The notes below the pieces were generated by a model. It was not told where the DNA came from. It saw nothing but the letters and a program-made list of their open reading frames with translations, and made no database searches. A stretch of 15,396 nucleotides of DNA from Vitrella brassicaformis CCMP3155 (Eukaryota > Protista > Chromerida), in assembly GCA_001179505.1 (NCBI GenBank), contig CDMY01000852.1, forward strand, positions 1 to 15,396, in the 5' to 3' direction. A program made the translations under genes and the position numbers. Shown piece after piece: positions 35-13,207 of this stretch (within the stretch, counting starts at the first letter, position 1; every line of letters begins with the position of its first letter).

Positions 35-582
35 ATGGTCGGACGAGGTAAGGAGAGACTCCGAGCCTCAGGAACGGACAGAAAGAGGGCAGGACGGCTG
101 GGAGCGAGGAGGGCCATAGGGAGGCAGGACAGGGTAGGAGGGACAGAGCGAGCGGACACGCGTGTGCATGCGTCGACGGAGAGCACAGTCGCCTTCATTT
201 CCTTCTTCTCTGTGTGCTGTGCGTCGCTCCCAATGCTGCAGCCGTGATAGCGACCATCCCCAGCGACCGGCTGCTCATGGAGGGGATAAGGGAGCTCATC
301 GAGGACCGAGAATACGCGAAGGGTGAGACCAAGCTCCCGTCAATGTATGTGGACACGCCCACACGCTCTCTGTCTATGCAGCCCGCATCCAGGAGTTCAA
401 GGGGCGCCTTGAGGAGTTGTACGCACACATCCGAGAAATAAAGGGTCAGTCACAGTTGCACAATGGGGTCAGAGCAGCCACACACGAGGAGAGACAGACA
501 ATCCCTTGATCGATTCTTTGCGGCATGTCTGTGCATATCCGCCATTCATGCCGGCAGACGAGAAGAGGGAGCTGGAGCAGCA
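35..582 (+). pseudogene. Truncated paralog (copy A) of the N-terminal module of the gene at 9671; 5' end unresolved
   Basis: Exons ..47, 242-322, 382-444, 558-582 (all phase 1) give AVIATIPSDRLLMEGIRELIEDREYAKARIQEFKGRLEELYAHIREIKDEKRELEQQ. Exon lengths of 81 and 63 nt equal exons 2 and 3 of the 9671 gene, and the introns are nearly identical. Homology stops after DEKRELEQQ, where it fuses into copy B. An in-frame TAA lies at 2-4. Confidence 0.6.
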
Positions 583-1124
583 ATGGCCACAGCAGCAAGC
601 AGCCTGTGGGAGCTGCACCTCTGGCACATGGACCGCATCCCTCACTCTGCCAAGACAGACAAGGTCTGGCGAGGTACGCAAGAAAGGCCGTCTCACGATG
701 GCTGGGAACGAGGGGGGCCATAGGGAGGGCAGGACAGGGCAGGAGGGACAGAGCGAGCGGACGCGCGTGTGCATGCGTCAACCAAAAGCACAGTCGCCTT
801 TATTTCCTTCAGTGATGGCGGCCGTGTCCACCGACAAGCACTTCATTAGTGAGATAGTGTTGCTCGTTGAGGACCGAGACCGAGCCAAGAGTGACCAAAC
901 TCCCGTCCATGTAGTATGTGGACACGCCAACACGCTCTCTCTGTCTGTCTATGCAGCCCGCTTGAACCTGCTCGAAGACCGGCTCACGAGACGCATCGTC
1001 GACCTCGACCACACCCTGAAACAGCTGCAGGTGAGTGACCGCAGACAGGGCAGAGGCAGGCCGAGTGTTCCTTCATGCAGGAGGCCGAGGAGGTGGTTTT
1101 CGGCGCCTCACAGCCTGACTGCAG
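583..1124 (+). CDS. Paralog (copy B) of the same module, hypothetical protein; 3' end unresolved (possibly to ~1300-1420)
   Basis: ATG 583; exons 583-673, 813-890, 957-1030, 1081-1124 with GT-AG and consistent phases: MATAASSLWELHLWHMDRIPHSAKTDKVWRVMAAVSTDKHFISEIVLLVEDRDRAKTRLNLLEDRLTRRIVDLDHTLKQLQEAEEVVFGASQPDC. Exon 1 aligns with MAAAKGLYELGLWHMPLNPDSAKIDEIE at 9683. Confidence 0.55.
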
Positions 1125-1522
1125 GTAAACACACACACACACACACGAGACAATACACCCATAGAAGCGTGTATGTATGTGTGTGTTGTATGTGTGTGTT
1201 CCACCGTGTGTCTCTCTGTGTCTGTGTCTCTGCCTCTGCCCCTTTGAAGGCCCGAGGCATACCGCTGTCTACATTTTATATCTCGTCGACCGTTTTCTTG
1301 ATTTCCTCTTCCCAGTAGACGGCCGACAACGAGTCTGCTGATGTCTACGAGGCCACTCAGCGTGTCTGTGGTGGCTAATGTTGGTTGTATGTGTGCGTTG
1401 TCAGTCTGCGATTTCTGAGTCATGGCTTGTCTGGAAGACTCAGAGCCTGACTTACGCGAGGATTGAAGAGCGCTCATGAATGAGCACAAGATGAGTCATC
1501 ACACCTTGACCTAACGGCCATG

Positions 1523-1584
1523 GGTGCGGGCAGCTGGGTGTCGCTGGCCACCGAGCCGAAGCATCCCTTCCACCAGATGACTGT
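1523..1584 (+). repeat. Inverted copy of part of the last tadA exon (partner 2379-2440)
   Basis: 1523-1584 is the reverse complement of 2379-2440 at 61 of 62 positions (encodes GAGSWVSLATEPKHPFHQM). It ends exactly at the N gap. Confidence 0.95.
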
Positions 1585-2242: not shown

Positions 2243-3102
2243 TCATTCAGCTACACCGCTCCCTCCCCTGCCCTCCCCCGTCAGTGAAGGCACCCCACTC
2301 GCCCCTCGCCTCGCCCGCGCCTCCCTGAAGAAGGTGCGGAGCAGCTGCCTGGCCTCCGTGGCCATGACGCCCCCCCTCACAGCCATCTGGTGGAAGGGAT
2401 GCTTCGGCTCGGTGGCCAGCGACACCCAGCTGCCCGCACCGCCCATTCTGTTGTCTGACGCGCCGTAGACGAGTGTGTGGATGCGCGCCAGCTGCATGGC
2501 GCCCACACACATGGGGCAGGGCTCCAGCGTCGTGTAGAGGGTGCAGTTTAACAGACGCCACGTACCTGCACGTCGACACACAAGCATACATCAACGGGAG
2601 ATGGCTGTCCTCTGCCTGTGATTGTTCATTCAGTGCCTGCAGCACACCGAGTATCTGAGAGGCTTCGCGGATGCACTGCAGCTCGGCGTGTGCGGTGGCG
2701 TCGTGGGCGGCCTCCACGCCATTTCTGCCCACTGATAGGACCTCACCTGTGAAGACACACACATTCTTGCCTGCACACGTCTGCTTCCTTTTTGTGCTGA
2801 CCTTGCCCATCCACGAGCACAGCGCCAATGGGCACCTCTCCTCTCTCAGCCGCCATGGCCGCCTGCTGCAGCGCCAGCCTCATGTACCGCTCATCGGATG
2901 GATGTGTGTCTGCCGCGCAATGCCGCCTCATCCAGCACTGCCGACTCCTCGACGACGTCCTCATGTGCTGCCAATGAACCGGGGCGCCATCTGCAGGCCG
3001 GGTGACCACAAAGCAGTGAGCCGTCATGCTGAATGTGGTGATGGCGAGGCACAAGGATAGCAGGAAGCTTCTCCAGCCGGGAAATGGTTTTTTGTTTGGC
3101 AT
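2243..3102 (-). CDS. tadA: tRNA adenosine(34) deaminase, bacterial/plastid TadA type, with a probable bipartite plastid-targeting leader (240 aa)
   Basis: Exons 3102-2802, 2746-2648, 2565-2243 (723 nt, phase-1 GT-AG introns). The core DERYMRLALQQAAMAAERGEVPIGAVLV..HDATAHAELQCIR..WRLLNCTLYTTLEPCPMCVGAM..RIHTLVYGA..FF has the HAE and PCxxC Zn motifs and follows the bacterial TadA pattern. HPFH recalls chloroplast TADA (from memory). The N-terminus MPNKKPFPGWRSFLLSLCLAITTFSMTAHC|FVVTRP resembles a signal peptide with Phe at +1. An alternative in-frame ATG lies at 3147. Confidence 0.93.
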
Positions 3103-3247
3103 CAAGATGGATGAGTCGCTATGGTCTCTGGCATGCTGACGGGTCACTCCACCAAGGAATCAGCGCCTCGAAGTGCCAGATCTGGGCCCTTCATTACGGA
3201 TCGCAATCATCTGCGAGCTTGCAAGTGATGAAGATCTGCATCCAAGA
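3103..3247. promoter_or_regulatory. Putative shared bidirectional promoter / 5' UTRs of tadA and mnmM
   Basis: Only 145 bp separate the two divergent ATGs. No motif was identified; the call rests on gene geometry. Confidence 0.55.
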
Positions 3248-4389
3248 ATGGCTGTGGCGATGAGTGCCCTGCTGTCGATGCTGCATTTGCCTTTTCTTCA
3301 TCATTCGATGGATGGAACACTGCAGTCGGCGCGCCGTCCTTCCCTCTCTCAGCCGAGCTCTCCGCCGGGGCTTCGCATGAGAGGCGATGCGTCGTGGTGG
3401 TCCTCTCCCCTGGCCTCGCACCTGCCGTTGAGCCGCCTGCTGTGGAAACAAGGGCTCAAGGTGCGCAATGGACGAGCTCAATACACATCGTCCTTCCGTA
3501 TGTTTGGCTGTTGTCTGTCAGATAGCCTGGCGGCAGGGCTGTGGACGCCACATGTGGCAACGGGAAGGACTCTCTCTTTCTCAGCACGCTGATCTTCCCA
3601 TCTGATGGCGATGATGAGACGGAGGCCGAGCTGATCTGCATCGATGTCCAGCGAGAAGCTATCGGTGGGTGAGTCAGCAGCCGTGAGGTACACACACTTG
3701 ACACCGCCACTTTGCTGTGTGCTGTTTGCTTCGTTGCAGGTTCGACCCGGTCCCTCCTCGCCGAAGAGTTACGACCACCACATTTGGAGAGGTAGGTCGT
3801 CACAGAGACCAGCCAGGCGGCCTTGAGCTCGTTGACACATTAATCAATTGTGTGATGTATCGCCCCTGCTGTCCGTCCTTAGGATCCGTTTATTCCACCA
3901 AAGCCACGAGAGGTTCCCTGACTGCATCGCCGACAACAGCGTCGATGTGATAGTGTACAACCTCGGGTCAGTTCTGCAGCAATTCAGTGCCTTCATACGT
4001 CATGCATTGATCACGTGTGTGTGATGTACGTACAAATGTGTGGTGTGGTGTGGTGTTAGGTATCTGCCTGGGGGAGACAAGAGCGTGACGACGCGCCACG
4101 ACACCACCATCACGTCGCTGACGGCTGCTCTTAAGCTCATTGTCAAGGGCGGCCTCATATCGGTCATGCTCTACAGGTCAGAAGTGACGCACACAGACGT
4201 CCAGCTTGCTGATATGCCCTGCTGTGTCGTGTTGTGCGTTTCTGCAGGGGCCATCCCGAGGGCACGGTTGAGTCGGATGGCGTCATCAGCTGGGCCTCGC
4301 AGCTTCCGGCCGACGAGTGGCGTGTGTTTCTGCATGAGCCGCTTAATAGGCCGACGTCGCCTGCCCTGATGACTTTGTATAGACTCTAA
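3248..4389 (+). CDS. mnmM: Class I SAM methyltransferase of the YtqB/MnmM family (tRNA nm5(s2)U34 methyltransferase; older name putative rRNA methylase), with a probable organelle-targeting leader (248 aa)
   Basis: Exons 3248-3460, 3526-3664, 3740-3791, 3883-3966, 4060-4176, 4248-4389 (747 nt, all GT-AG, phases consistent). Motifs KPGGRAVDATCGNGKDSLFL, CIDVQREAI, RLFHQSHE, VYNLGYLPGGDKSVTT, GGLISVMLYRGHPEG match the B. subtilis YtqB pattern as recalled (VDATMGNGHDT, FNLGYLPGGDKSITT, YHGHPEG). A ~55-aa hydrophobic then Ser/Arg/Pro-rich extension precedes the domain. Confidence 0.88.
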
Positions 4390-5181
4390 GATGAAGGACA
4401 GATGTGTGCCTGTTGTGGCTGGGAGGGTGGGTGAGTGAGGTGGTCCATGGTCGGGTGTGCGCATGATCGGAACGCGTAGGGCGACGAGAGAGATGAGACG
4501 TGCCTGACGACTTGATGCAGCTACGGATGGCTTGGCCATTCATCGGATGGTTTGGCGATTCATCGCAAAGTGGGTGTGTGCAGTGATGGTATGTACAGTC
4601 TGGTGTTCGTGGGATATTTTCTTCACGGATTGACCCAAGCAACGGTTTCACCCATCCGTCAGCCAGTCCCAGTCTTCCCTCCGTCCCGCATGCACGTCAG
4701 TCCGGTGACGTCCCTCACCCATGCAGCCACCCATCCATCCGTCCACCCATTGCGCACACTCACTACAGCAGCCAGAAAAACACACGACGTCACACCCACA
4801 CATAACACATCCAGCCATTGATTGTCACCGCAGCCAACCAGAGACAATCGAAAAACTGCCAGCTTACGACGGACAGACACTCAACCACAAAGGTGTGAAA
4901 AGGGTGTGGTCCTAGCATAGCAGACTGATATCAAACCAGCCAGCTGCTTGAAAGAGAAAGGGAGAGCGTTGACGGGCTGTCTGTCTGTCTTTCTCTACTG
5001 TACACACGTCTGTCTGTCCCCACTGAATCTATCCGCTGAACCCATCCACCCGCTGAAACCAACGATCCATCCGTCGACCTGCACAACACAGCTCATGCAA
5101 GACGTAAGTGAGCGCATTGGTTTCTCGTGTCTCGCCTCTCCCTCCCTCACTCCCTCACTCACCCGTGCTGTGTGTGTGTGT

Positions 5182-7428
5182 TTAGTAGCGAGTCGTCTTG
5201 CCCTTCTTCTTCTTGCCCTTCTTCTTGTTGGCCTCCTTCTCGACAGCCGGCGCGGGCCTGGGGTCAATCTCGTCATCTCCCGGCGAGTCAGGCGACGAGG
5301 ACTGCTCCTGGGCAACTGCACACACGCACAACACCCACACCCACACACGACACCAGGCATGAGAATCGATTCATTGCGGGAGGGACACATGGCTGGATAT
5401 GTACTTGCTTACCGCGAGAGTTGAAGTTCTGCAGGGCCGCCCCCTTAAGGAGGAAGGATAGAGCAGAATATACACAAACACACACAGTGGTTGTTGGCAT
5501 GCACGTAGAAATGTGTGTATGTGTTTTCTTCCTCTCTGTCGCTTGCGTGCATCCGTACGGCCGCGGCGCCCTGAAATGCACGCCAGCATGTGTGTGTATG
5601 TGTGTGTGTGTGGTGGGTCTTCTCCCTCTGCGCACCTGTGCGGTGTCGTACTGAGCCGCGTCCTGACACACAACGAACTCATCCGCATGTGACTGGGTGG
5701 CTGTGTGTGTGTGTGTGGGGGGGGGGGGAGGTACCTCCAACTTGGGGAGGTAGATGTCGCCGTACGTGTCGTCGTTCAGCTTCTTGGCCAGCCACGTGTT
5801 CGTGTGCCAGTCGAGATACCACTCAAACCCCTCGTAGTCGCGGTAGTCGGAGTTCTCGGCCTCGGGGATGCTCTTGAGGTACTCGAACCAGGAACGCTGC
5901 ACGAAGGCAGGCAGGCCGACACACAAAGAGTGAGGGGCGAGCTGCTGGTTGGTGGAGTCCTTTTGTCTGTCTGTGTGCCCCCACCATCATCGGCATGGGA
6001 CTGATGGTGCGGAACATCGTTTTCTCAAACGAGAGCTCGGCGTCAAACTCACTGCAGCAGCCCAGCACCCATTCAAACCAACACACACACACACACATAC
6101 ACACATGTGCCCGTTTGTATGTGTGTATGTGTGGCGGCCGGCCGGCCGGCCGTACAGGTACCATTGCGCCCCGGCGAAGGGTCTAAGTGTTGTGTCGATG
6201 ATGTTGACCAGCGGGCAGAACACCTTGGGGGCCCAGGGCGAAAGCAACTCGACATACTGACATGACGCAAACACAGAGAGAGAAGCAAGGGACGCCACAC
6301 ACGCAGCTGTGTACACATGTCATCCACAGGTACACACGCGAATAGCGGCGCACCTGTTTCTTGTTGATGTACGTGAAGGCCATGAAGTAGTTCTGCCCAG
6401 CGAACGGCTCGCTGCCACAGGGCCCCTTGCGGCCACGACACGTCGAACTGTCCGCATGCGCGCACCCACACACACACACATGCAGGGGAAGAACACATTC
6501 ACACACGCGATGACCATGAGTCTGGTTGTCCGTCGGTCTGTCTGTCTGTCTGTCTGTCTGTCTTGCGTGTGTGTATGTGCTGTACATCCCCACCTGCTCA
6601 CGAGCTCTATTTTGATCCCCTCGTCCTTCTTGAGCTCAACTTCCTCCATCACCAGGTGGATGGATGAAGGCATAGCACATGTGCGGGCACGTCTGTGAGT
6701 GCATGTTCATCTGCATGTGTCTGTACCATGAGACCCTTGCAGATTTTCCAGTAGTGGAGCACACCCGACACACCCGTCACCAACGCACTGCCCTTCGCTG
6801 TGTGACATGGACAACCACACACACAGACAAATGCGCGCGTGGTTGTGGTCAGGTTTGTTTGTTCGGTCTTACACTCCGTGTCCATGGCCACCATCGTCCA
6901 GTTTTTGGCGAGCTCCATGCCACTGCACCCGGGGTGCAGGGGCGGCCAGTCGCCACGGCACACGAGGGGCAACTGACCTGACACTACACACACACACACA
7001 CACACTCTTGTGTTTCATCCGGACCACGCACATCAGTGTGTGAGTGTTATGTGGTCTCACGCAGTTCGATGAACTGCAGCAGCACTTGAAGCTGGTACCT
7101 GCACACAGCACACACACACACCGGACATACATTCATACAGCGGGCCACCTGCTTTGTCCAGTCACTTGGATAGGCCCTTGAGATCCTCGTAGTCGATTGC
7201 GGGGGGGTGCTTCTTCTTACGGCGAATCGTATCCGCGACCTCCTGCAACCACGATGGACGGACAGCACACGTGCAGCAATGTGCGCATTGCAAGGCAGCA
7301 GCCCCATCCCTCCCTCCCTCCCTCCTCCCCTCCCTGGTGACATGGATCTCTCCCTCCCTCACCTCCTCCTTGTGCATCTTGACCAGATCCGAGCAGGCCG
7401 TGGTGGTGGTGCCGGGCTGGTTGGTCAT
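5182..7428 (-). CDS. Multi-exon hypothetical protein, no family recognised; Lys-rich C-terminus (possible nuclear localisation signal)
   Basis: Phase-consistent exons 7428-7363, 7242-7166, 7098-7061, 6977-~6874, then 6447-6354, 6256-6162, 6051-5985, 5941-5735, then 5443-5413, 5315-5182 (ends EANKKKGKKKKGKTTRY*). Splicing in ~6594-6800 and ~5450-5730 is ambiguous. Confidence 0.7.
6536..6563. repeat. Intronic (GTCT)7 microsatellite
   Basis: Seen directly. Confidence 0.9.
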
Positions 7429-7654
7429 GACGCACTGACGGACTGCAGGAGAAGGGTGGCCTCCGTGCAAGCGACACAGGGGAGGAACTTGCGGGGCCTC
7501 CACCAAACGTATGGGTCGGCGGGTGCCTTTTGCGGGCAAAACCAGACAGAGTGACCTTTGCCAGACTCACGGACGAAAGAAATTGCCTCTGCAGAGTTTC
7601 GGCCGCGATTGAGAATCCTTGTCGAGCTCGTAAATTCTTGGGAGGCCTGTGAAA
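7429..7654. promoter_or_regulatory. Putative divergent promoter region between the hypothetical gene and the kinase
   Basis: 226 bp between divergent predicted ATGs (7428 minus, 7655 plus). Confidence 0.4.
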
Positions 7655-8431
7655 ATGGTCGATGAGGTTGGCGTGGTTGTGCAGGACACGTATGAGATTG
7701 TAGAGAAGATCGGCGAGGGCGGGTAAGGAATGAAAAAGGCCTTCCGACGTCACACATTTGATCTGTCTGCACGGCATTGTATGATGGTGTTGCAGGTGCG
7801 GAACGACGTACAAAGCCAAGCACCCCGCTCACGATGATTTGTTTGCACTCAAGAAGATGATGAAGTGAGGCCGCAAAGCGAGCACTCGTGCTGAGCAGCG
7901 CATGTATCTGGATGGGTCTGTCCTTCCACCTCATGGCCATACGTCAGGCAAGACAACATCCCCCGGTCGGTGTTCGACATCTACAAGCTCCTTTGTCGAG
8001 CGCAACACGGCAACATCGGCAAGATAGTTAAGGTGAGCACATGCGCACGACGTCAAAAGGCGTGGCATGCGGTTGTTTGTTTGTTTGTGTGTGTGTGTGT
8101 GGTAAGGTTATCGAGGAGGATGACTGCTACTGGGTGGTGATGGAGTTCATCGATGGGGAGCCGGTTGAGGACTACATCGATGATGAGGAGGAGGACAGTG
8201 AGGAGGAGGAGGAGGAGGAGGATGATGAGGATGATGGGGAGGAGGACAGCAAGGACGGTGATAAGGAGGAGGACAGTAAGGACAGCAAGACCATCTCCGT
8301 AGACGACTTCTGGCAGGTCGTGCGGGGGGTCCTCAGGGGCCTCAGGTACCTTCACGAGGATCGCAAGGTGAGCGAGTCATCTTCCACCCGCCATCCCTCC
8401 CTCCCCTGCACACACTGCAGGCAATGGCCGG

Positions 8432-9670: not shown

Positions 9671-12600
9671 ATGGCAGCAGCAATGGCAGCAGCAAAAGGC
9701 CTATATGAGCTTGGGCTCTGGCACATGCCACTCAACCCCGACTCCGCCAAGATAGATGAGATCGAGGGAGGTACGCAGGAAAGGCCGTCTCACGATGGCT
9801 GGGAGCGAGGAGGGCCATAGGGAGGCAGGACAGGACAGGAGGGACAGAGGAGCGGACACGCGTGTGCATGCGTCGACGGAGAGCACAGTCGCCTTCATTT
9901 CCTTCTTCTCTGTGTGTGCTGTGCGTCGCTCACAATGCTGCACTACAGTTATAGCGGCCTTCCCCACGCTCGATGAAGCGCTCAACGAGGAGCTAATGTC
10001 CTTCATCGAGGACCGCGACCAGGCCAAGGGTGACAAAACTCCCGTCAATGTATGTGGACACGCACATGCTCTCTCTGTCTATGCAGAGTACATTCTGAAG
10101 CTCGAGGAGCGCACCGAGGAGCTGGACGACCTCTGGCGCAAAGTCCGTGGTGAGTGTCAGTTGCACAATGGGGTCAGAGCAGCCACACGCGAGGAGAGAC
10201 AGACAATCTCTTTATCGATTCTTTGCGGCATGTCTGTGCGTATCCGCCATCCATGCCGGCAGACGAGAAGAGGGAGCTTGAGCAGCAGCTGAGGGAAGAG
10301 CTGCAGAAGTACCGTGACGACATCGCTGCCAGGGAGGAGGCCCTGCAGACCATGGCTGCCCAGCGAGACAGCTTAGCCAAGTCGGTGTCGACTCTCAGCG
10401 AGGACCTCCGCAAGCAGGCCGACGAGGTGCTGGCGGCCAAGAGGGCAATGCAAGAGGCCAATGAAGCCAAGCTGGACGCGGAGAGGGACAAGGAGCGAGC
10501 AGTGGCGTCCCTCACCCACACCACGCGCGACAAGATCAGGCGCTTGGAGTCCGCCAACCATAGCCTCGAGGCACAGAGCGCCGAGATTCCTCGTCTGAAG
10601 CAGCAATTCAGCGAGCAGCTGGGCAGCGAACGAAAAGCCGCAGAAGCCGCAAGAAAGGAGAAGGACGACCTACAGCGCGATCGCAACCAGCTGGCCGAGA
10701 GGCTGGATCACGAGACAAGTGCACTGGAGTCGGCTCGGGCCAAGCTCGATCAAACGAGGCGAGAGAAGGCTGAAGTGGAGGCCAAGGACATCGAGACATC
10801 ATCCAAGATGGCCAGCCTCAAGGCACAGCTGGAGGGAGAGACGGCCGCACTGGAGGAAGCAAGAGAGGAGGCGCGGGCGGCCAAGGAAAGACAAGAAGAG
10901 CTTCTCAGTCAGGACGCACAAAATGCCGTCACCCTTGCGGAGATGACAGAGAAGCTCCACAAGCAGGCTGAGGGCGTCGCTGCGGCAGAGAGGGCTCTTC
11001 ATCAGGCCGAAGAGGAGAGGGACCGCTTGGCCGAGCAGCACAAGGATGCCGCTGACACGATTGAGGAGCTCACCAAGGAGGTCAAGAGCGCCACTGAGGC
11101 TCTGCGCAAGGCCGAGGAGGGCATGGAGGCGATTGCTCATGAGAGGGATGTCCTGGCCGACAGGCTGGCGAGCTACCAGGGGATGCCGCCCCTGCAGCCC
11201 ACCCACACACCCCACTGCCCCATGGCCCCCCAGCACCCCCCCATGCAGCAGCACCCCGCCCCTTTTCCGCCGCATCCCAACGTTCTCCCCACACCAGCCT
11301 TCGGCAATCCCAACGCTCCCTCCATCCAGCAGCAGCCCAAGGGTGGCATGGTCCAGGCCGCCAACGGGTATGGGGGCGGTCATGGCTCGCCGCAGTTGCA
11401 GCCCCAGCAGCCAGGGGGTGGAGGTGGGGGATATGGCTGTGTGAGCGGCTACTGGTCGCCCCCGCTAAATCTACTAGTCGCCCCTGCAATTCACGGATAT
11501 GGTGAGCGGAAGGAACAAGGAGACAGCGGCACACGCCCAAGAAGGCAGACACGCGAGGCCTTTCTCCTGTCTGTTCTGCAGGTGGGTCGCCCTTTCAAGG
11601 CCACCCTGCGCCGAGCCCGCCTCTGCAGAATCTGGTGAGACATCCCTCTGACATGCATTGAACATGTTAGTTACAGCAATGAGTATCTACCGTCTGTCAG
11701 GGGTTCGTCGATGCGCTGGCTGCACATGGAGGGGCCATGGCGGCGGATCCGTCATCTGCAGTGTGACCCATGGGCCAGGGAGTGTTGGTCGGGGGCAGCA
11801 GCACGCAACACCACTACCAGAGTAAGCAAGCCAACACAACACAAATGTGACGAAACGATTGCGATGAACACATGCTTTCGATCCGTCTTTGCGACGTGTG
11901 TGCAGATCAGCCACTCGCAGCGTCATCGCATCGTGGTGGCGGTCACGATGGCCACCCGTCCTACGGCGCCGGGAGCCCCTTCCAGCAGCCGGCCAATCCG
12001 TGGCCCCACATGACCCCCGCCATTGCACAGCGCGGCCACGAGATAGACATTGACCCTCTGGCGGGGCTAGACAGCGTCTCGTCGCGACCGCCTTTTGACC
12101 ATAACGCCCACAGAATGCCGCCACAGAGGTGAGCTACTGATTGACACTCACGACAGACACCACAAGCTGAGCTGTCCTTCATGCCCTCTCTCTCCCTTTG
12201 TGTGTCTCTGTACCAGTCATGTCGATCAGCTGCCGCGTCAGCAGCGGCCCCAGAACGGCTCGCAGGGAATCGGCATGGGTCTGTGGCTGGGCAGCCCCCC
12301 ACAACAGCAGCAGCAGACGGGCGTGAGGGCATCTTCGCCCGACGACTGGCTCAGCCCGCCCCCAGGCAGTGCAGTGCCGCCCTTCTCCCCTTACGGACAG
12401 CCTGCTGGTGGTGGTGCGATGGGCGACGGTTTGTTCGATGCTCCGCGCGGTGCCGTGGACATGAGTCTGTATGGTGTTGGGCCGCCGGTGGCGTATGTGG
12501 AGACGGGAGTGCGGTCGGGCGGCAGTGGGGGCGGTATGAGGACGGGCAGCGGCGGGAGCGGCCACGGCTCACAGGCGTCCGGTGGCATGGCTGCTACGAA

Positions 12601-13207
12601 CGATCCTGACGCCATCTCTGCTGGTACGTCGGGCGGAGAGAGGGAGGGAGAAGACCATCAGTGAGATGGGGCGGATACACTATGCTTATTCCTCTTGTGT
12701 GTGTGTGTGTGTGCAGACAGGAGTGGGTACGAGCTGTTCCCTCGCTCAGAGGCCCCCGGCGGTCTATTCGGTCGTCTCGGTCCCGCCGCCAGCCGCCCCC
12801 AGCCGTCTCATCCGCCATTCCCTCCACGAGCGTCTCCCTTCCCGCCCCTCATGCCCTCACATGACGCCGCCCAAGCGCCGCATCTCCACCCACACCCAGC
12901 TCCTGCCATCGGCGCCGCATCGTCTGCTGCCGACCCAAATCTGTTGTTTGGGAACTGGACCAATCGGCTCGGTGGGTATGGCGGTCAGCCTGAGGACCAC
13001 CGTGCGGCGGCAGCGGCGACGGCATCGGAGAGCCATCGCCACGTGCAGGGAAGGAGGGGGCTCGGTTCGGCGAGGAGAGAGGGCAGAGGAGCTGGTGGCC
13101 TCTTTGGCGGCGGGCAGACGTCAGCAGCACGAGAGCCGCACCAGATGCGGGACAGGTCGCAGAGCCCCCCTCAGAAGAAGGGGTGCCTCTGCGGCCTGTG
13201 GTGCTGA
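9671..13207 (+). CDS. Hypothetical protein (~900 aa; copy C): short N-terminal module, ~300-aa coiled coil, Pro/Gln/Gly-rich tail, C-terminal KKGCLCGLWC
   Basis: Exons 9671-9770, 9949-10029, 10087-10149, 10263-11501, 11582-11634, 11701-11760, 11911-12128, 12217-12623, 12717-13207 (2712 nt, in frame). An E/K/A/L heptad-like tract spans ~10263-11170. Junctions at 11441-11911 are least certain. Confidence 0.75.

What the first reader, a model, noticed from the sequence alone, without database searches (positions are those of the whole stretch)
2243..4389. Head-to-head pair of bacterial-type tRNA wobble-modification genes (TadA and MnmM) in a eukaryotic nucleus
Seen: two intron-containing genes diverge with 145 bp between ATGs, and both encode N-terminal extensions. 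Established: TadA makes I34 in tRNA-Arg(ACG), and MnmM/YtqB methylates nm5(s2)U34 to mnm5(s2)U34, so both act on anticodon position 34 in bacterial-type translation. Inference: two unrelated folds acting at the same tRNA position and sharing one short promoter suggests an operon-like co-regulated unit for plastid tRNA maturation. I am not aware of this linkage being described.
Basis: partly seen in the sequence, partly recalled or inferred. Interest (0 to 1): 0.82.

Follow-up and report, generated by a model that had tools for sequence, protein, structure and literature searches.

The report
Back-to-back plastid tRNA-modification genes, Vitrella
Two real, expressed genes for bacterial-type tRNA wobble-base enzymes (TadA and MnmM) sit back to back in the alga Vitrella brassicaformis, but this tight arrangement is the norm in that genome and was found beside no relative's MnmM gene, so it is most likely an ordinary neighbour pair and not a special regulatory unit.

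Summary
The window is Vitrella brassicaformis scaffold CDMY01000852.1. It carries a 3-exon TadA-like gene (minus strand, 3102-2246) and a 6-exon MnmM/YtqB gene (plus strand, 3248-4389), with 145 bp between their ATGs. All seven introns appear as joints in spliced transcript contigs. Both proteins have N-terminal leaders that look like signal peptide plus transit peptide, and the public annotation cuts both leaders off.

MnmM passes NCBIfam's equivalog cut-off (163 vs 135 bits) and keeps all seven residues essential in the Bacillus enzyme. TadA matches the TadA model across all three exons, and its closest solved structures are bacterial TadAs.

The "operon-like unit" reading is not supported:
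- The genome paper reports a median gene distance of 92 bp and an excess of head-to-head pairs.
- A second, unrelated divergent pair lies 226 bp apart in this same window.
- The spacer carries GCGAGCT, which earlier notes of this scan report in most divergent spacers of this genome on other scaffolds.
- TadA lies near MnmM in 1 of 200 bacterial loci and 0 of 8 eukaryote-type contigs, and none of 10 long MnmM relatives is fused to a deaminase.
- The two enzymes act on different tRNAs.

Chromera could not be checked. Verdict: ordinary gene pair. The useful by-products are corrected N-termini and a chromerid MnmM that apicomplexans lack.

The parts
2246..3102 (-). TadA-like tRNA adenosine(34) deaminase gene. 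Three exons (3102-2802, 2746-2648, 2565-2246), 240 aa, with HAE and PCPMC zinc motifs.
   Evidence: Splicing model. Both introns are joints in X1 transcript contigs. NF008113 TadA matches run in order over the three exons at 25.6, 13.7 and 84.7 bits. Best solved structures for exon 3 are bacterial TadAs at 61-72 bits, against ADAT2 at 47 bits. Annotated in GCA_001179505.1 as a 194-aa product starting at 2964.
2899..3102 (-). N-terminal extension of TadA (residues 1-68). It has a basic start, a hydrophobic core (SFLLSLCLAITTF), a candidate cleavage site AHC|F, then a stretch rich in R, S and T.
   Evidence: Hydropathy maximum 2.24 at residues 13-23; residues 31-68 hold 6 R/K against 2 D/E. The transcript contig reaches 3192, so it includes this ATG. 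The public model starts at Met47 and omits the hydrophobic core. Targeting is inferred, not shown.
3103..3247 (.). 145-bp divergent spacer between the two start codons. The transcript contigs end at 3192 (TadA) and begin at 3238 (MnmM), leaving at most 45 bp outside both.
   Evidence: Contigs cannot prove transcription start sites.
3212..3220 (+). TGCGAGCTT (core GCGAGCT), the recurrent divergent-spacer word of this genome, inside the 45-bp core.
   Evidence: It is the only perfect 9-mer in the window. The 7-mer occurs 4 times against 2.8 expected window-wide, or about 0.026 expected per 145 bp. Its genome-wide recurrence is taken from earlier notes and was not re-measured here.
3248..4389 (+). 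MnmM/YtqB-type tRNA (mnm5s2U34) methyltransferase gene. Six exons (3248-3460, 3526-3664, 3740-3791, 3883-3966, 4060-4176, 4248-4389), 248 aa.
   Evidence: Splicing model. All five introns are joints in X1. The annotated 205-aa product P0026 scores 163.2 bits against the NF053511 cut-off of 135. Best solved structures are B. subtilis and S. aureus MnmM (8h0s, 8h1a). Essential residues are kept.
3248..3415 (+). N-terminal extension of MnmM (residues 1-56). It has a hydrophobic start (MAVAMSALLSMLHLPF), then a stretch rich in S, P and R.
   Evidence: Hydropathy maximum 2.11 at residues 2-12; residues 19-55 hold 4 R/K, 2 D/E and 10 S/T. Homology to bacterial MnmM begins at residue ~57. The transcript contig starts at 3238. 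The public model starts at Met44 (3377).

Best explanation
These are two independent nuclear genes of Vitrella brassicaformis that encode bacterial-type tRNA wobble-base enzymes, probably imported into the plastid. TadA would deaminate A34 of plastid tRNA-Arg(ACG) to inosine. MnmM would methylate nm5s2U34 to mnm5s2U34 on plastid tRNAs that read split codon boxes. The genes are transcribed in opposite directions from one very short spacer of the generic Vitrella type, which carries the GCGAGCT word. Their adjacency is most likely a by-product of a genome in which most genes are packed head to head, not a selected operon-like unit. Shown here: the gene structures, expression, splicing, family membership and spacing; that short head-to-head spacing is usual in this genome, from the genome paper and one further pair in this window; and absence of the linkage in all relatives examined. 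Inferred: plastid targeting, the enzymatic substrates, and that the pairing arose by chance.
For: Gene models and splicing. Family assignment. All seven residues whose mutation abolishes B. subtilis MnmM activity are kept (K11->R63, D34->D86, N101->N161, Y104->Y164, K110->K170, Y141->Y201, H144->H204, residue list from PMC9976899). The window is scaffold CDMY01000852.1, whose six annotated genes run + - + - + +; its second divergent pair has 226 bp between starts. The genome paper reports a median gene distance of 92 bp and an excess of head-to-head pairs among close neighbours, and argues that such clustering stabilises transcription rather than co-regulating the pair (PMC4501334). GCGAGCT lies at 3213-3219, between the transcript contig ends, matching the motif earlier notes report in most divergent spacers of this genome. 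TadA lies within the fetched stretch in 1 of 120 bacterial MnmM loci, 0 of 80 metagenome loci covering 758 kb, and 0 of 8 eukaryote-type contigs covering 94.6 kb, including Discosporangium and Marchantia. None of the 10 longest MnmM relatives carries a deaminase domain. The two enzymes use different tRNA substrates and belong to no common pathway (established knowledge; PMC9976899 for MnmM).
Against: The prior chance that TadA's head-to-head partner is another plastid wobble-position enzyme is small: about k/22,817 with k around 10-30, or roughly 0.05-0.15% (my estimate). This is a post-hoc pick from thousands of notes on this genome. Head-to-head pairs in other eukaryotes are modestly enriched for co-expressed, functionally related genes. 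The nearest sequenced relative, Chromera velia, could not be examined. Only contigs of the runs were served, not raw reads, so co-expression was not measured.
Confidence: 0.75

Rival explanations
1. The pairing is a selected, co-regulated unit. A shared bidirectional promoter couples the supply of two plastid wobble-position enzymes to plastid translation demand.
For: At most 45 bp lie outside both transcript contigs, so the two promoters must overlap physically. Both proteins carry similar signal-plus-transit-like leaders. Both act on position 34 of bacterial-type tRNAs. One bacterial MAG (Izemoplasmatales, L101) also has tadA and mnmM divergent and about 250 bp apart.
Against: The spacing and the motif are generic for this genome. 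The linkage appears in 1 of 200 bacterial loci and 0 of 8 eukaryote-type contigs. There are no fusions. The enzymes have different tRNA substrates and no shared pathway step. The genome paper itself says head-to-head pairs are only modestly co-expressed.
Confidence: 0.12
2. The two products go to different compartments, or one leader is not translated as modelled, so the genes share DNA but not a cellular function.
For: The MnmM leader lacks a basic start and is a weaker signal peptide than TadA's. The public annotation starts both proteins at internal methionines. A 10-codon upstream reading frame precedes the TadA start. No targeting predictor was available.
Against: Both transcript contigs include the upstream ATGs. 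The MnmM ATG at 3248 has A at -3 and G at +4, read from the sequence. Vitrella MnmM falls in a clade (SH-aLRT 98) that holds only sequences of algae with complex plastids, eukaryote-context contigs and unidentified sequences; those retrieved nearly all carry N-terminal extensions, at least one with a hydrophobic core ending in ...GTA|F. Plant MnmM is a chloroplast enzyme (PMC9976899). From my own knowledge, not checked here, chromerid mitochondrial genomes encode no tRNAs, so a bacterial-type TadA or MnmM would have no substrate there.
Confidence: 0.1
3. The juxtaposition is an assembly artefact that joins two unlinked genes.
For: A 300-N gap and an inverted repeat lie 0.8 kb away, at the 3' end of TadA.
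Against: Independent DNA contigs in two runs span 2411-5133 with no differences, covering most of TadA, the spacer and all of MnmM.
Confidence: 0.02

Closest known systems
Chloroplast MnmM (Arabidopsis atMnmM, rice osMnmM) and B. subtilis MnmM/YtqB (Cho et al. 2023, PMC9976899)
   Same: Full-length PF06962 / NF053511 match above the curated cut-off. Identity to Bacillus MnmM is 38%, against 36-38% for the plant enzymes shown active in vitro. All seven essential residues are kept, and there is an N-terminal organelle-type leader.
   Different: It sits in a separate eukaryotic clade with ochrophyte algae, not with land plants (quick tree). The three residues that contact U35 (Q163, Q176, N178) are A, R and T here. 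The leader looks bipartite, not like a simple chloroplast transit peptide. Activity is untested.
Bacterial TadA and, from my own knowledge, the plant chloroplast tRNA-Arg(ACG) adenosine deaminase TADA (not read here)
   Same: HAE and PCxxC zinc motifs, a C-terminal helix with the FFR..R pattern, and best profile and structure matches to TadA rather than ADAT2/ADAT3.
   Different: It carries a 68-residue N-terminal leader and a ~45-residue C-terminal tail with no counterpart in bacterial TadA. The summed exon scores (124 bits) are below the 150-bit equivalog cut-off, but the protein could only be scored in pieces.
Eukaryotic bidirectional (head-to-head) gene pairs, as described genome-wide for Vitrella and Chromera (Woo et al. 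2015, PMC4501334)
   Same: Divergent orientation, a spacer far below 1 kb, and both genes expressed.
   Different: Nothing sets this pair apart except that both products modify tRNA position 34. The spacer uses the same GCGAGCT word noted elsewhere in the genome.
Apicoplast xm5s2U pathway of Plasmodium and other apicomplexans (PMC11702754)
   Same: A related plastid lineage, with a bacterial-type wobble-uridine pathway encoded in the nucleus.
   Different: That study found no MnmC, MnmL or MnmM in six apicomplexans, whereas Vitrella keeps MnmM. The loss may therefore have occurred after the split from chromerids (inference).

Membership tests
MnmM / YtqB (NCBIfam NF053511, Pfam PF06962) | Whole-protein score above the curated equivalog cut-off | tested here: met
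   P0026 (the annotated 205-aa product of this gene) scores 163.2 bits against a cut-off of 135 and covers profile positions 3-178 of 183.
MnmM / YtqB (NCBIfam NF053511, Pfam PF06962) | Residues essential for catalysis and U33/U34 binding in B. subtilis MnmM (K11, D34, N101, Y104, K110, Y141, H144) | tested here: met
   They map to R63, D86, N161, Y164, K170, Y201 and H204. Six are identical and one is a conservative K-to-R change (residue list from PMC9976899).
MnmM / YtqB (NCBIfam NF053511, Pfam PF06962) | SAM-dependent methylation of nm5s2U34 to mnm5s2U34 on tRNA | not testable with these tools
   Needs an enzyme assay or tRNA mass spectrometry.
TadA (NCBIfam NF008113) | Deaminase zinc-binding motifs H-A-E and P-C-x-x-C in a CDA-fold domain | tested here: met
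   HAELQC and EPCPMC are present in the spliced protein. PF00383 and PF14437 match in order over the three exons.
TadA (NCBIfam NF008113) | Whole-protein score above the equivalog cut-off (150 bits) | tested here: inconclusive
   The protein could only be scored exon by exon: 25.6 + 13.7 + 84.7 = 124 bits, covering profile positions 4-156 of 165. The spliced protein had no reference and was not typed in.
TadA (NCBIfam NF008113) | Closer to bacterial TadA than to eukaryotic ADAT2/ADAT3 or to guanine/cytidine deaminases | tested here: met
   Exon 3 scores 61-72 bits against the TadA structures 2nx8, 7cph, 2b3j and 1z3a. It scores 47 bits against ADAT2 and 34 bits or less against guanine, guanosine or deoxycytidine deaminases.
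Operon-like or conserved co-regulated gene pair | Linkage conserved in related genomes | tested here: not met
   1 of 120 bacterial loci, 0 of 80 metagenome loci and 0 of 8 eukaryote-type contigs.
Operon-like or conserved co-regulated gene pair | Arrangement unusual against the genome background | tested here: not met
   Median gene distance is 92 bp and head-to-head pairs are enriched (PMC4501334). The window holds a second divergent pair at 226 bp.
Operon-like or conserved co-regulated gene pair | Correlated expression beyond that of ordinary neighbours | not testable with these tools
   Only assembled contigs of the runs were available, and these give no usable expression levels.
Plastid-targeted protein of a complex red-lineage plastid | Bipartite leader: signal peptide followed by a transit-peptide-like region, often with F at the cleavage site | tested here: inconclusive
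   The hydropathy and composition profiles fit, clearly for TadA and more weakly for MnmM. No SignalP or ASAFind was available and there are no localisation data.

The most novel reading that the evidence does not exclude
The TadA-MnmM divergent pair is a selected module in which one minimal bidirectional promoter ties two plastid anticodon-position-34 enzymes to plastid translation demand. This would be a eukaryotic functional counterpart of an operon for organellar tRNA maturation, perhaps echoed by the divergent tadA-mnmM pair in one Izemoplasmatales genome.
Probability: 0.08. Interest if true: 0.45.

Novelty: new member of a known kind. Interest (0 to 1): 0.2.

Why it matters
As a regulatory unit it matters little, because the arrangement is what this compact genome does with most genes. 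There are three modest gains. (1) Both public gene models are truncated at the N-terminus and so hide leaders that look plastid-directed, which would make proteome-wide plastid predictions miss two tRNA-modification enzymes. (2) A chromerid keeps MnmM, which a recent study could not find in six apicomplexans, so the final methylation step of mnm5s2U may have been lost on the way to parasitism. (3) The eukaryotic MnmM sequences sampled fall into two clades nested among Chlamydiota and related bacteria, not cyanobacteria, which is relevant to the debate on chlamydial contributions to plastid function.

Tried and rejected
1. A word search with a stop-free pseudo-protein spanning exon 5 found nothing and wasted one search.
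I replaced it with a degenerate DNA pattern for NLGYLPGGDK, which returned 120 bacterial loci, all true MnmM.
3. A profile search with bacterial MnmM plus the window's exons and a single-sequence search with P0026 were dominated by Chlamydiota-like metagenome proteins. Eukaryotic relatives surfaced only with a profile of the eukaryote clade against the representative library.
6. I considered a TadA-MnmM fusion (Rosetta-stone evidence). Ten long MnmM relatives show only PF06962 and generic methyltransferase domains, plus one fusion with Mur-ligase domains, and no deaminase.
7. I considered misassembly of the spacer and rejected it on the gap-free DNA contigs.
8. Run X2, labelled as another organism in the same study, holds 99-100% identical spliced MnmM contigs. 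I read this as the same organism or carry-over, not as a homologue.
9. I did not type the spliced proteins into any search tool. TadA was therefore scored only by exon.

Full report
**What is there**

The 15,396-base window is the whole scaffold CDMY01000852.1 of Vitrella brassicaformis CCMP3155 (GCA_001179505.1). The MnmM-type protein P0026 is recorded on a single 15,396-bp contig, and the look-up returned that record.

On the minus strand I built a three-exon gene (3102-2802, 2746-2648, 2565-2246) encoding 240 residues, with the deaminase motifs HAE and PCPMC. On the plus strand I built a six-exon gene (3248-3460, 3526-3664, 3740-3791, 3883-3966, 4060-4176, 4248-4389) encoding 248 residues.

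**Expression and splicing**

Contigs of run X1 skip precisely the seven introns I had predicted, all GT..AG on the gene's own strand. Run X2 shows four of the MnmM joints. DNA contigs of runs X3 and X4 cross 2411-5133 without one difference, so the head-to-head junction is real DNA.

The TadA transcript contig extends up to 3192 and the MnmM contig begins at 3238. At most 45 bp of the spacer therefore lie outside both, although contigs cannot prove start sites.

**Identity of the proteins**

- **TadA, profile matches.** Its three exons match NCBIfam TadA (NF008113) in order, over profile positions 4-156 of 165 (25.6, 13.7 and 84.7 bits), and also Pfam PF00383 and PF14437.
- **TadA, structure matches.** Exon 3 finds bacterial TadA structures first (61-72 bits), ahead of ADAT2 (47 bits) and guanine, guanosine or deoxycytidine deaminases. 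The summed score is below the 150-bit equivalog cut-off, but the protein could only be scored in pieces, so that criterion is inconclusive.
- **MnmM, profile and structure matches.** The exons match NF053511 and PF06962 in order. The annotated product P0026 scores 163.2 bits against a cut-off of 135. Its best solved relatives are the B. subtilis and S. aureus MnmM structures.
- **MnmM, key residues.** All seven residues whose mutation abolishes B. subtilis MnmM activity (PMC9976899) are kept, one as K to R. Identity to Bacillus MnmM is 38%, the same range as the plant orthologues shown active in vitro. The three residues that contact U35 differ.

**N-terminal extensions**

Homology to 120 bacterial MnmM proteins starts at about residue 57, and TadA homology starts at about residue 67-69.

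- **TadA leader.** It has a basic start, a hydrophobic core (hydropathy 2.24) and a plausible cleavage site AHC|F, followed by a stretch rich in R, S and T.
- **MnmM leader.** It has a hydrophobic start (hydropathy 2.11) and then a stretch rich in S, P and R.

Both fit the signal-plus-transit leader used for complex plastids, TadA more clearly than MnmM. This is inference from composition only.

The public annotation starts both proteins at internal methionines (Met47 at 2964 and Met44 at 3377). It therefore omits the hydrophobic parts, although the transcript contigs include the upstream ATGs.

**Is the pairing special?**

Several independent lines say no.

- **Genome background.** The genome paper reports a median distance between Vitrella genes of 92 bp and an excess of head-to-head orientation among close neighbours. 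It argues that such clustering stabilises transcription more than it co-regulates the pair (PMC4501334).
- **This scaffold.** Its six annotated genes run + - + - + +. The other divergent pair, an unknown 338-aa protein and a protein kinase, has 226 bp between annotated starts.
- **The spacer motif.** Earlier notes of this scan report that GCGAGCT sits in most short divergent spacers of this genome. I tested only this spacer. TGCGAGCTT lies at 3212-3220, inside the 45-bp core, and is the only perfect 9-mer in the window. The 7-mer is expected about 0.026 times per 145 bp. The promoter therefore looks generic, not dedicated.
- **Bacterial relatives.** A DNA pattern for the motif NLGYLPGGDK fetched 120 bacterial loci, all with a full-length MnmM. 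TadA lay in the same stretch (up to 8 kb) in one of them, an Izemoplasmatales MAG where the pair is also divergent. A rough estimate of about 0.3 such cases by chance fits that count. Eighty metagenome loci (758 kb) had none.
- **Eukaryotic relatives.** Eight eukaryote-type contigs (94.6 kb) carry MnmM homologues. They include the brown alga Discosporangium, the liverwort Marchantia and several contigs with eukaryotic neighbour genes. None has a TadA-like sequence by tblastn or by Pfam listing.
- **Fusions.** Ten long MnmM relatives carry no deaminase domain.
- **Biochemistry.** TadA edits tRNA-Arg(ACG), whereas MnmM finishes xm5s2U on other tRNAs. They share a nucleotide position, not a substrate or a pathway.

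- The prior chance of this particular partner is low, roughly 0.1% by my estimate. However, the pair was picked post hoc from thousands of notes.
- Chromera could not be reached. None of the 20 clusters I looked up by name, and no named hit in the searches, was from Chromera.
- Co-expression could not be measured.

I give the selected-unit reading about one chance in ten.

**Side results**

- **Phylogeny.** In a quick maximum-likelihood tree, Vitrella MnmM falls in a clade (SH-aLRT 98) made only of ochrophyte sequences, eukaryote-context contigs and unidentified sequences. Land plants form a second clade, and both are nested among Chlamydiota and related bacteria. The best bacterial match is a Chlamydiae MAG at 45.6% identity.
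- **Loss in parasites.** A recent study found no MnmM in six apicomplexans (PMC11702754), so Vitrella retains a step that the parasites lack.
- **Duplicated 3' end of TadA.** It forms an inverted repeat next to the scaffold gap.
- **Upstream reading frame.** A 10-codon frame whose stop overlaps the TadA start (UGAUG) lies in the leader that the transcript contig covers.

**Verdict**

Both genes are genuine new members of known plastid-type families. The operon-like interpretation is not supported, and the arrangement is ordinary for this genome.

Noticed in passing
window 1523-1584 and 2379-2440, N gap 1585-1884: A 62-nt inverted repeat (98%) copies part of TadA exon 3 (residues ~176-196) onto the other strand and ends exactly at the 300-N gap. 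DNA contigs show about 2x depth over 1885-2440, 7 substitutions and small indels relative to the window, and a loose end at 2440 that continues into the sequence left of 1523. This points to a real inverted duplication of up to ~0.5 kb covering the TadA 3' end, so the TadA C-terminal tail is uncertain.
   Followed up: partly
window 2964 and 3377: The public gene models (194 aa and 205 aa) start at internal methionines. Transcript contigs include the upstream ATGs at 3102 and 3248, which add 46 and 43 residues holding the hydrophobic, signal-peptide-like parts.
   Followed up: yes
window 3134-3102, minus strand: A 10-codon upstream reading frame (MPETIATHPS) lies in the TadA leader. Its stop codon overlaps the main start (UGAUG), an arrangement that could allow termination-reinitiation if transcription starts upstream of 3134, as the contig reaching 3192 suggests.
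   Followed up: no
window 7428-7655: A second divergent pair lies on the same scaffold: an unknown 338-aa protein (minus) and a protein kinase (plus), with 226 bp between annotated starts. Its spacer holds the palindrome CGAGCTCG (6 of 7 letters of the GCGAGCT word).
   Followed up: partly
window 244-1318 and 9683-13207: Two genes share a paralogous segment (for example ...IDSLRHVCAYPP.MPADEKRELEQQ at ~506 and ~10154), and there are direct repeats of 83, 35 and 34 nt at 90-378 and 694-947. This is the subject of another note on this scaffold (s1-239513).
   Followed up: no
L101:24-1064 (Izemoplasmatales MAG, contig CAZCTR010000042.1): This is the only bacterial locus of 200 in which a TadA homologue (257-24, minus) and MnmM (510-1064, plus) are neighbours. 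They are also divergent, with about 250 bp between them.
   Followed up: partly
proteins P0026, P0121, P0127, P0139, P0164, P0211, P0229, P0234, P0243 and others (tree): Eukaryotic MnmM sequences form two clades: ochrophyte algae, unidentified sequences and Vitrella in one, land plants in the other. Both are nested among Chlamydiota/PVC-type sequences and not with Firmicutes. The study that identified MnmM (PMC9976899) reports that cyanobacteria carry MnmC instead.
   Followed up: partly
proteins P0234, P0236, P0243 (Cladosiphon, an unidentified eukaryote-context contig, Discosporangium): MnmM homologues of two brown algae and one unidentified eukaryote carry 170-200 extra N-terminal residues with no Pfam match, far longer than a targeting leader.
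   Followed up: no
run X2 on window 3551-4274: A run filed under a different organism label in the same study holds spliced MnmM contigs identical or nearly identical to the window (three at 99% or more, one at 95-99%). This suggests the same organism or carry-over between libraries.
   Followed up: no
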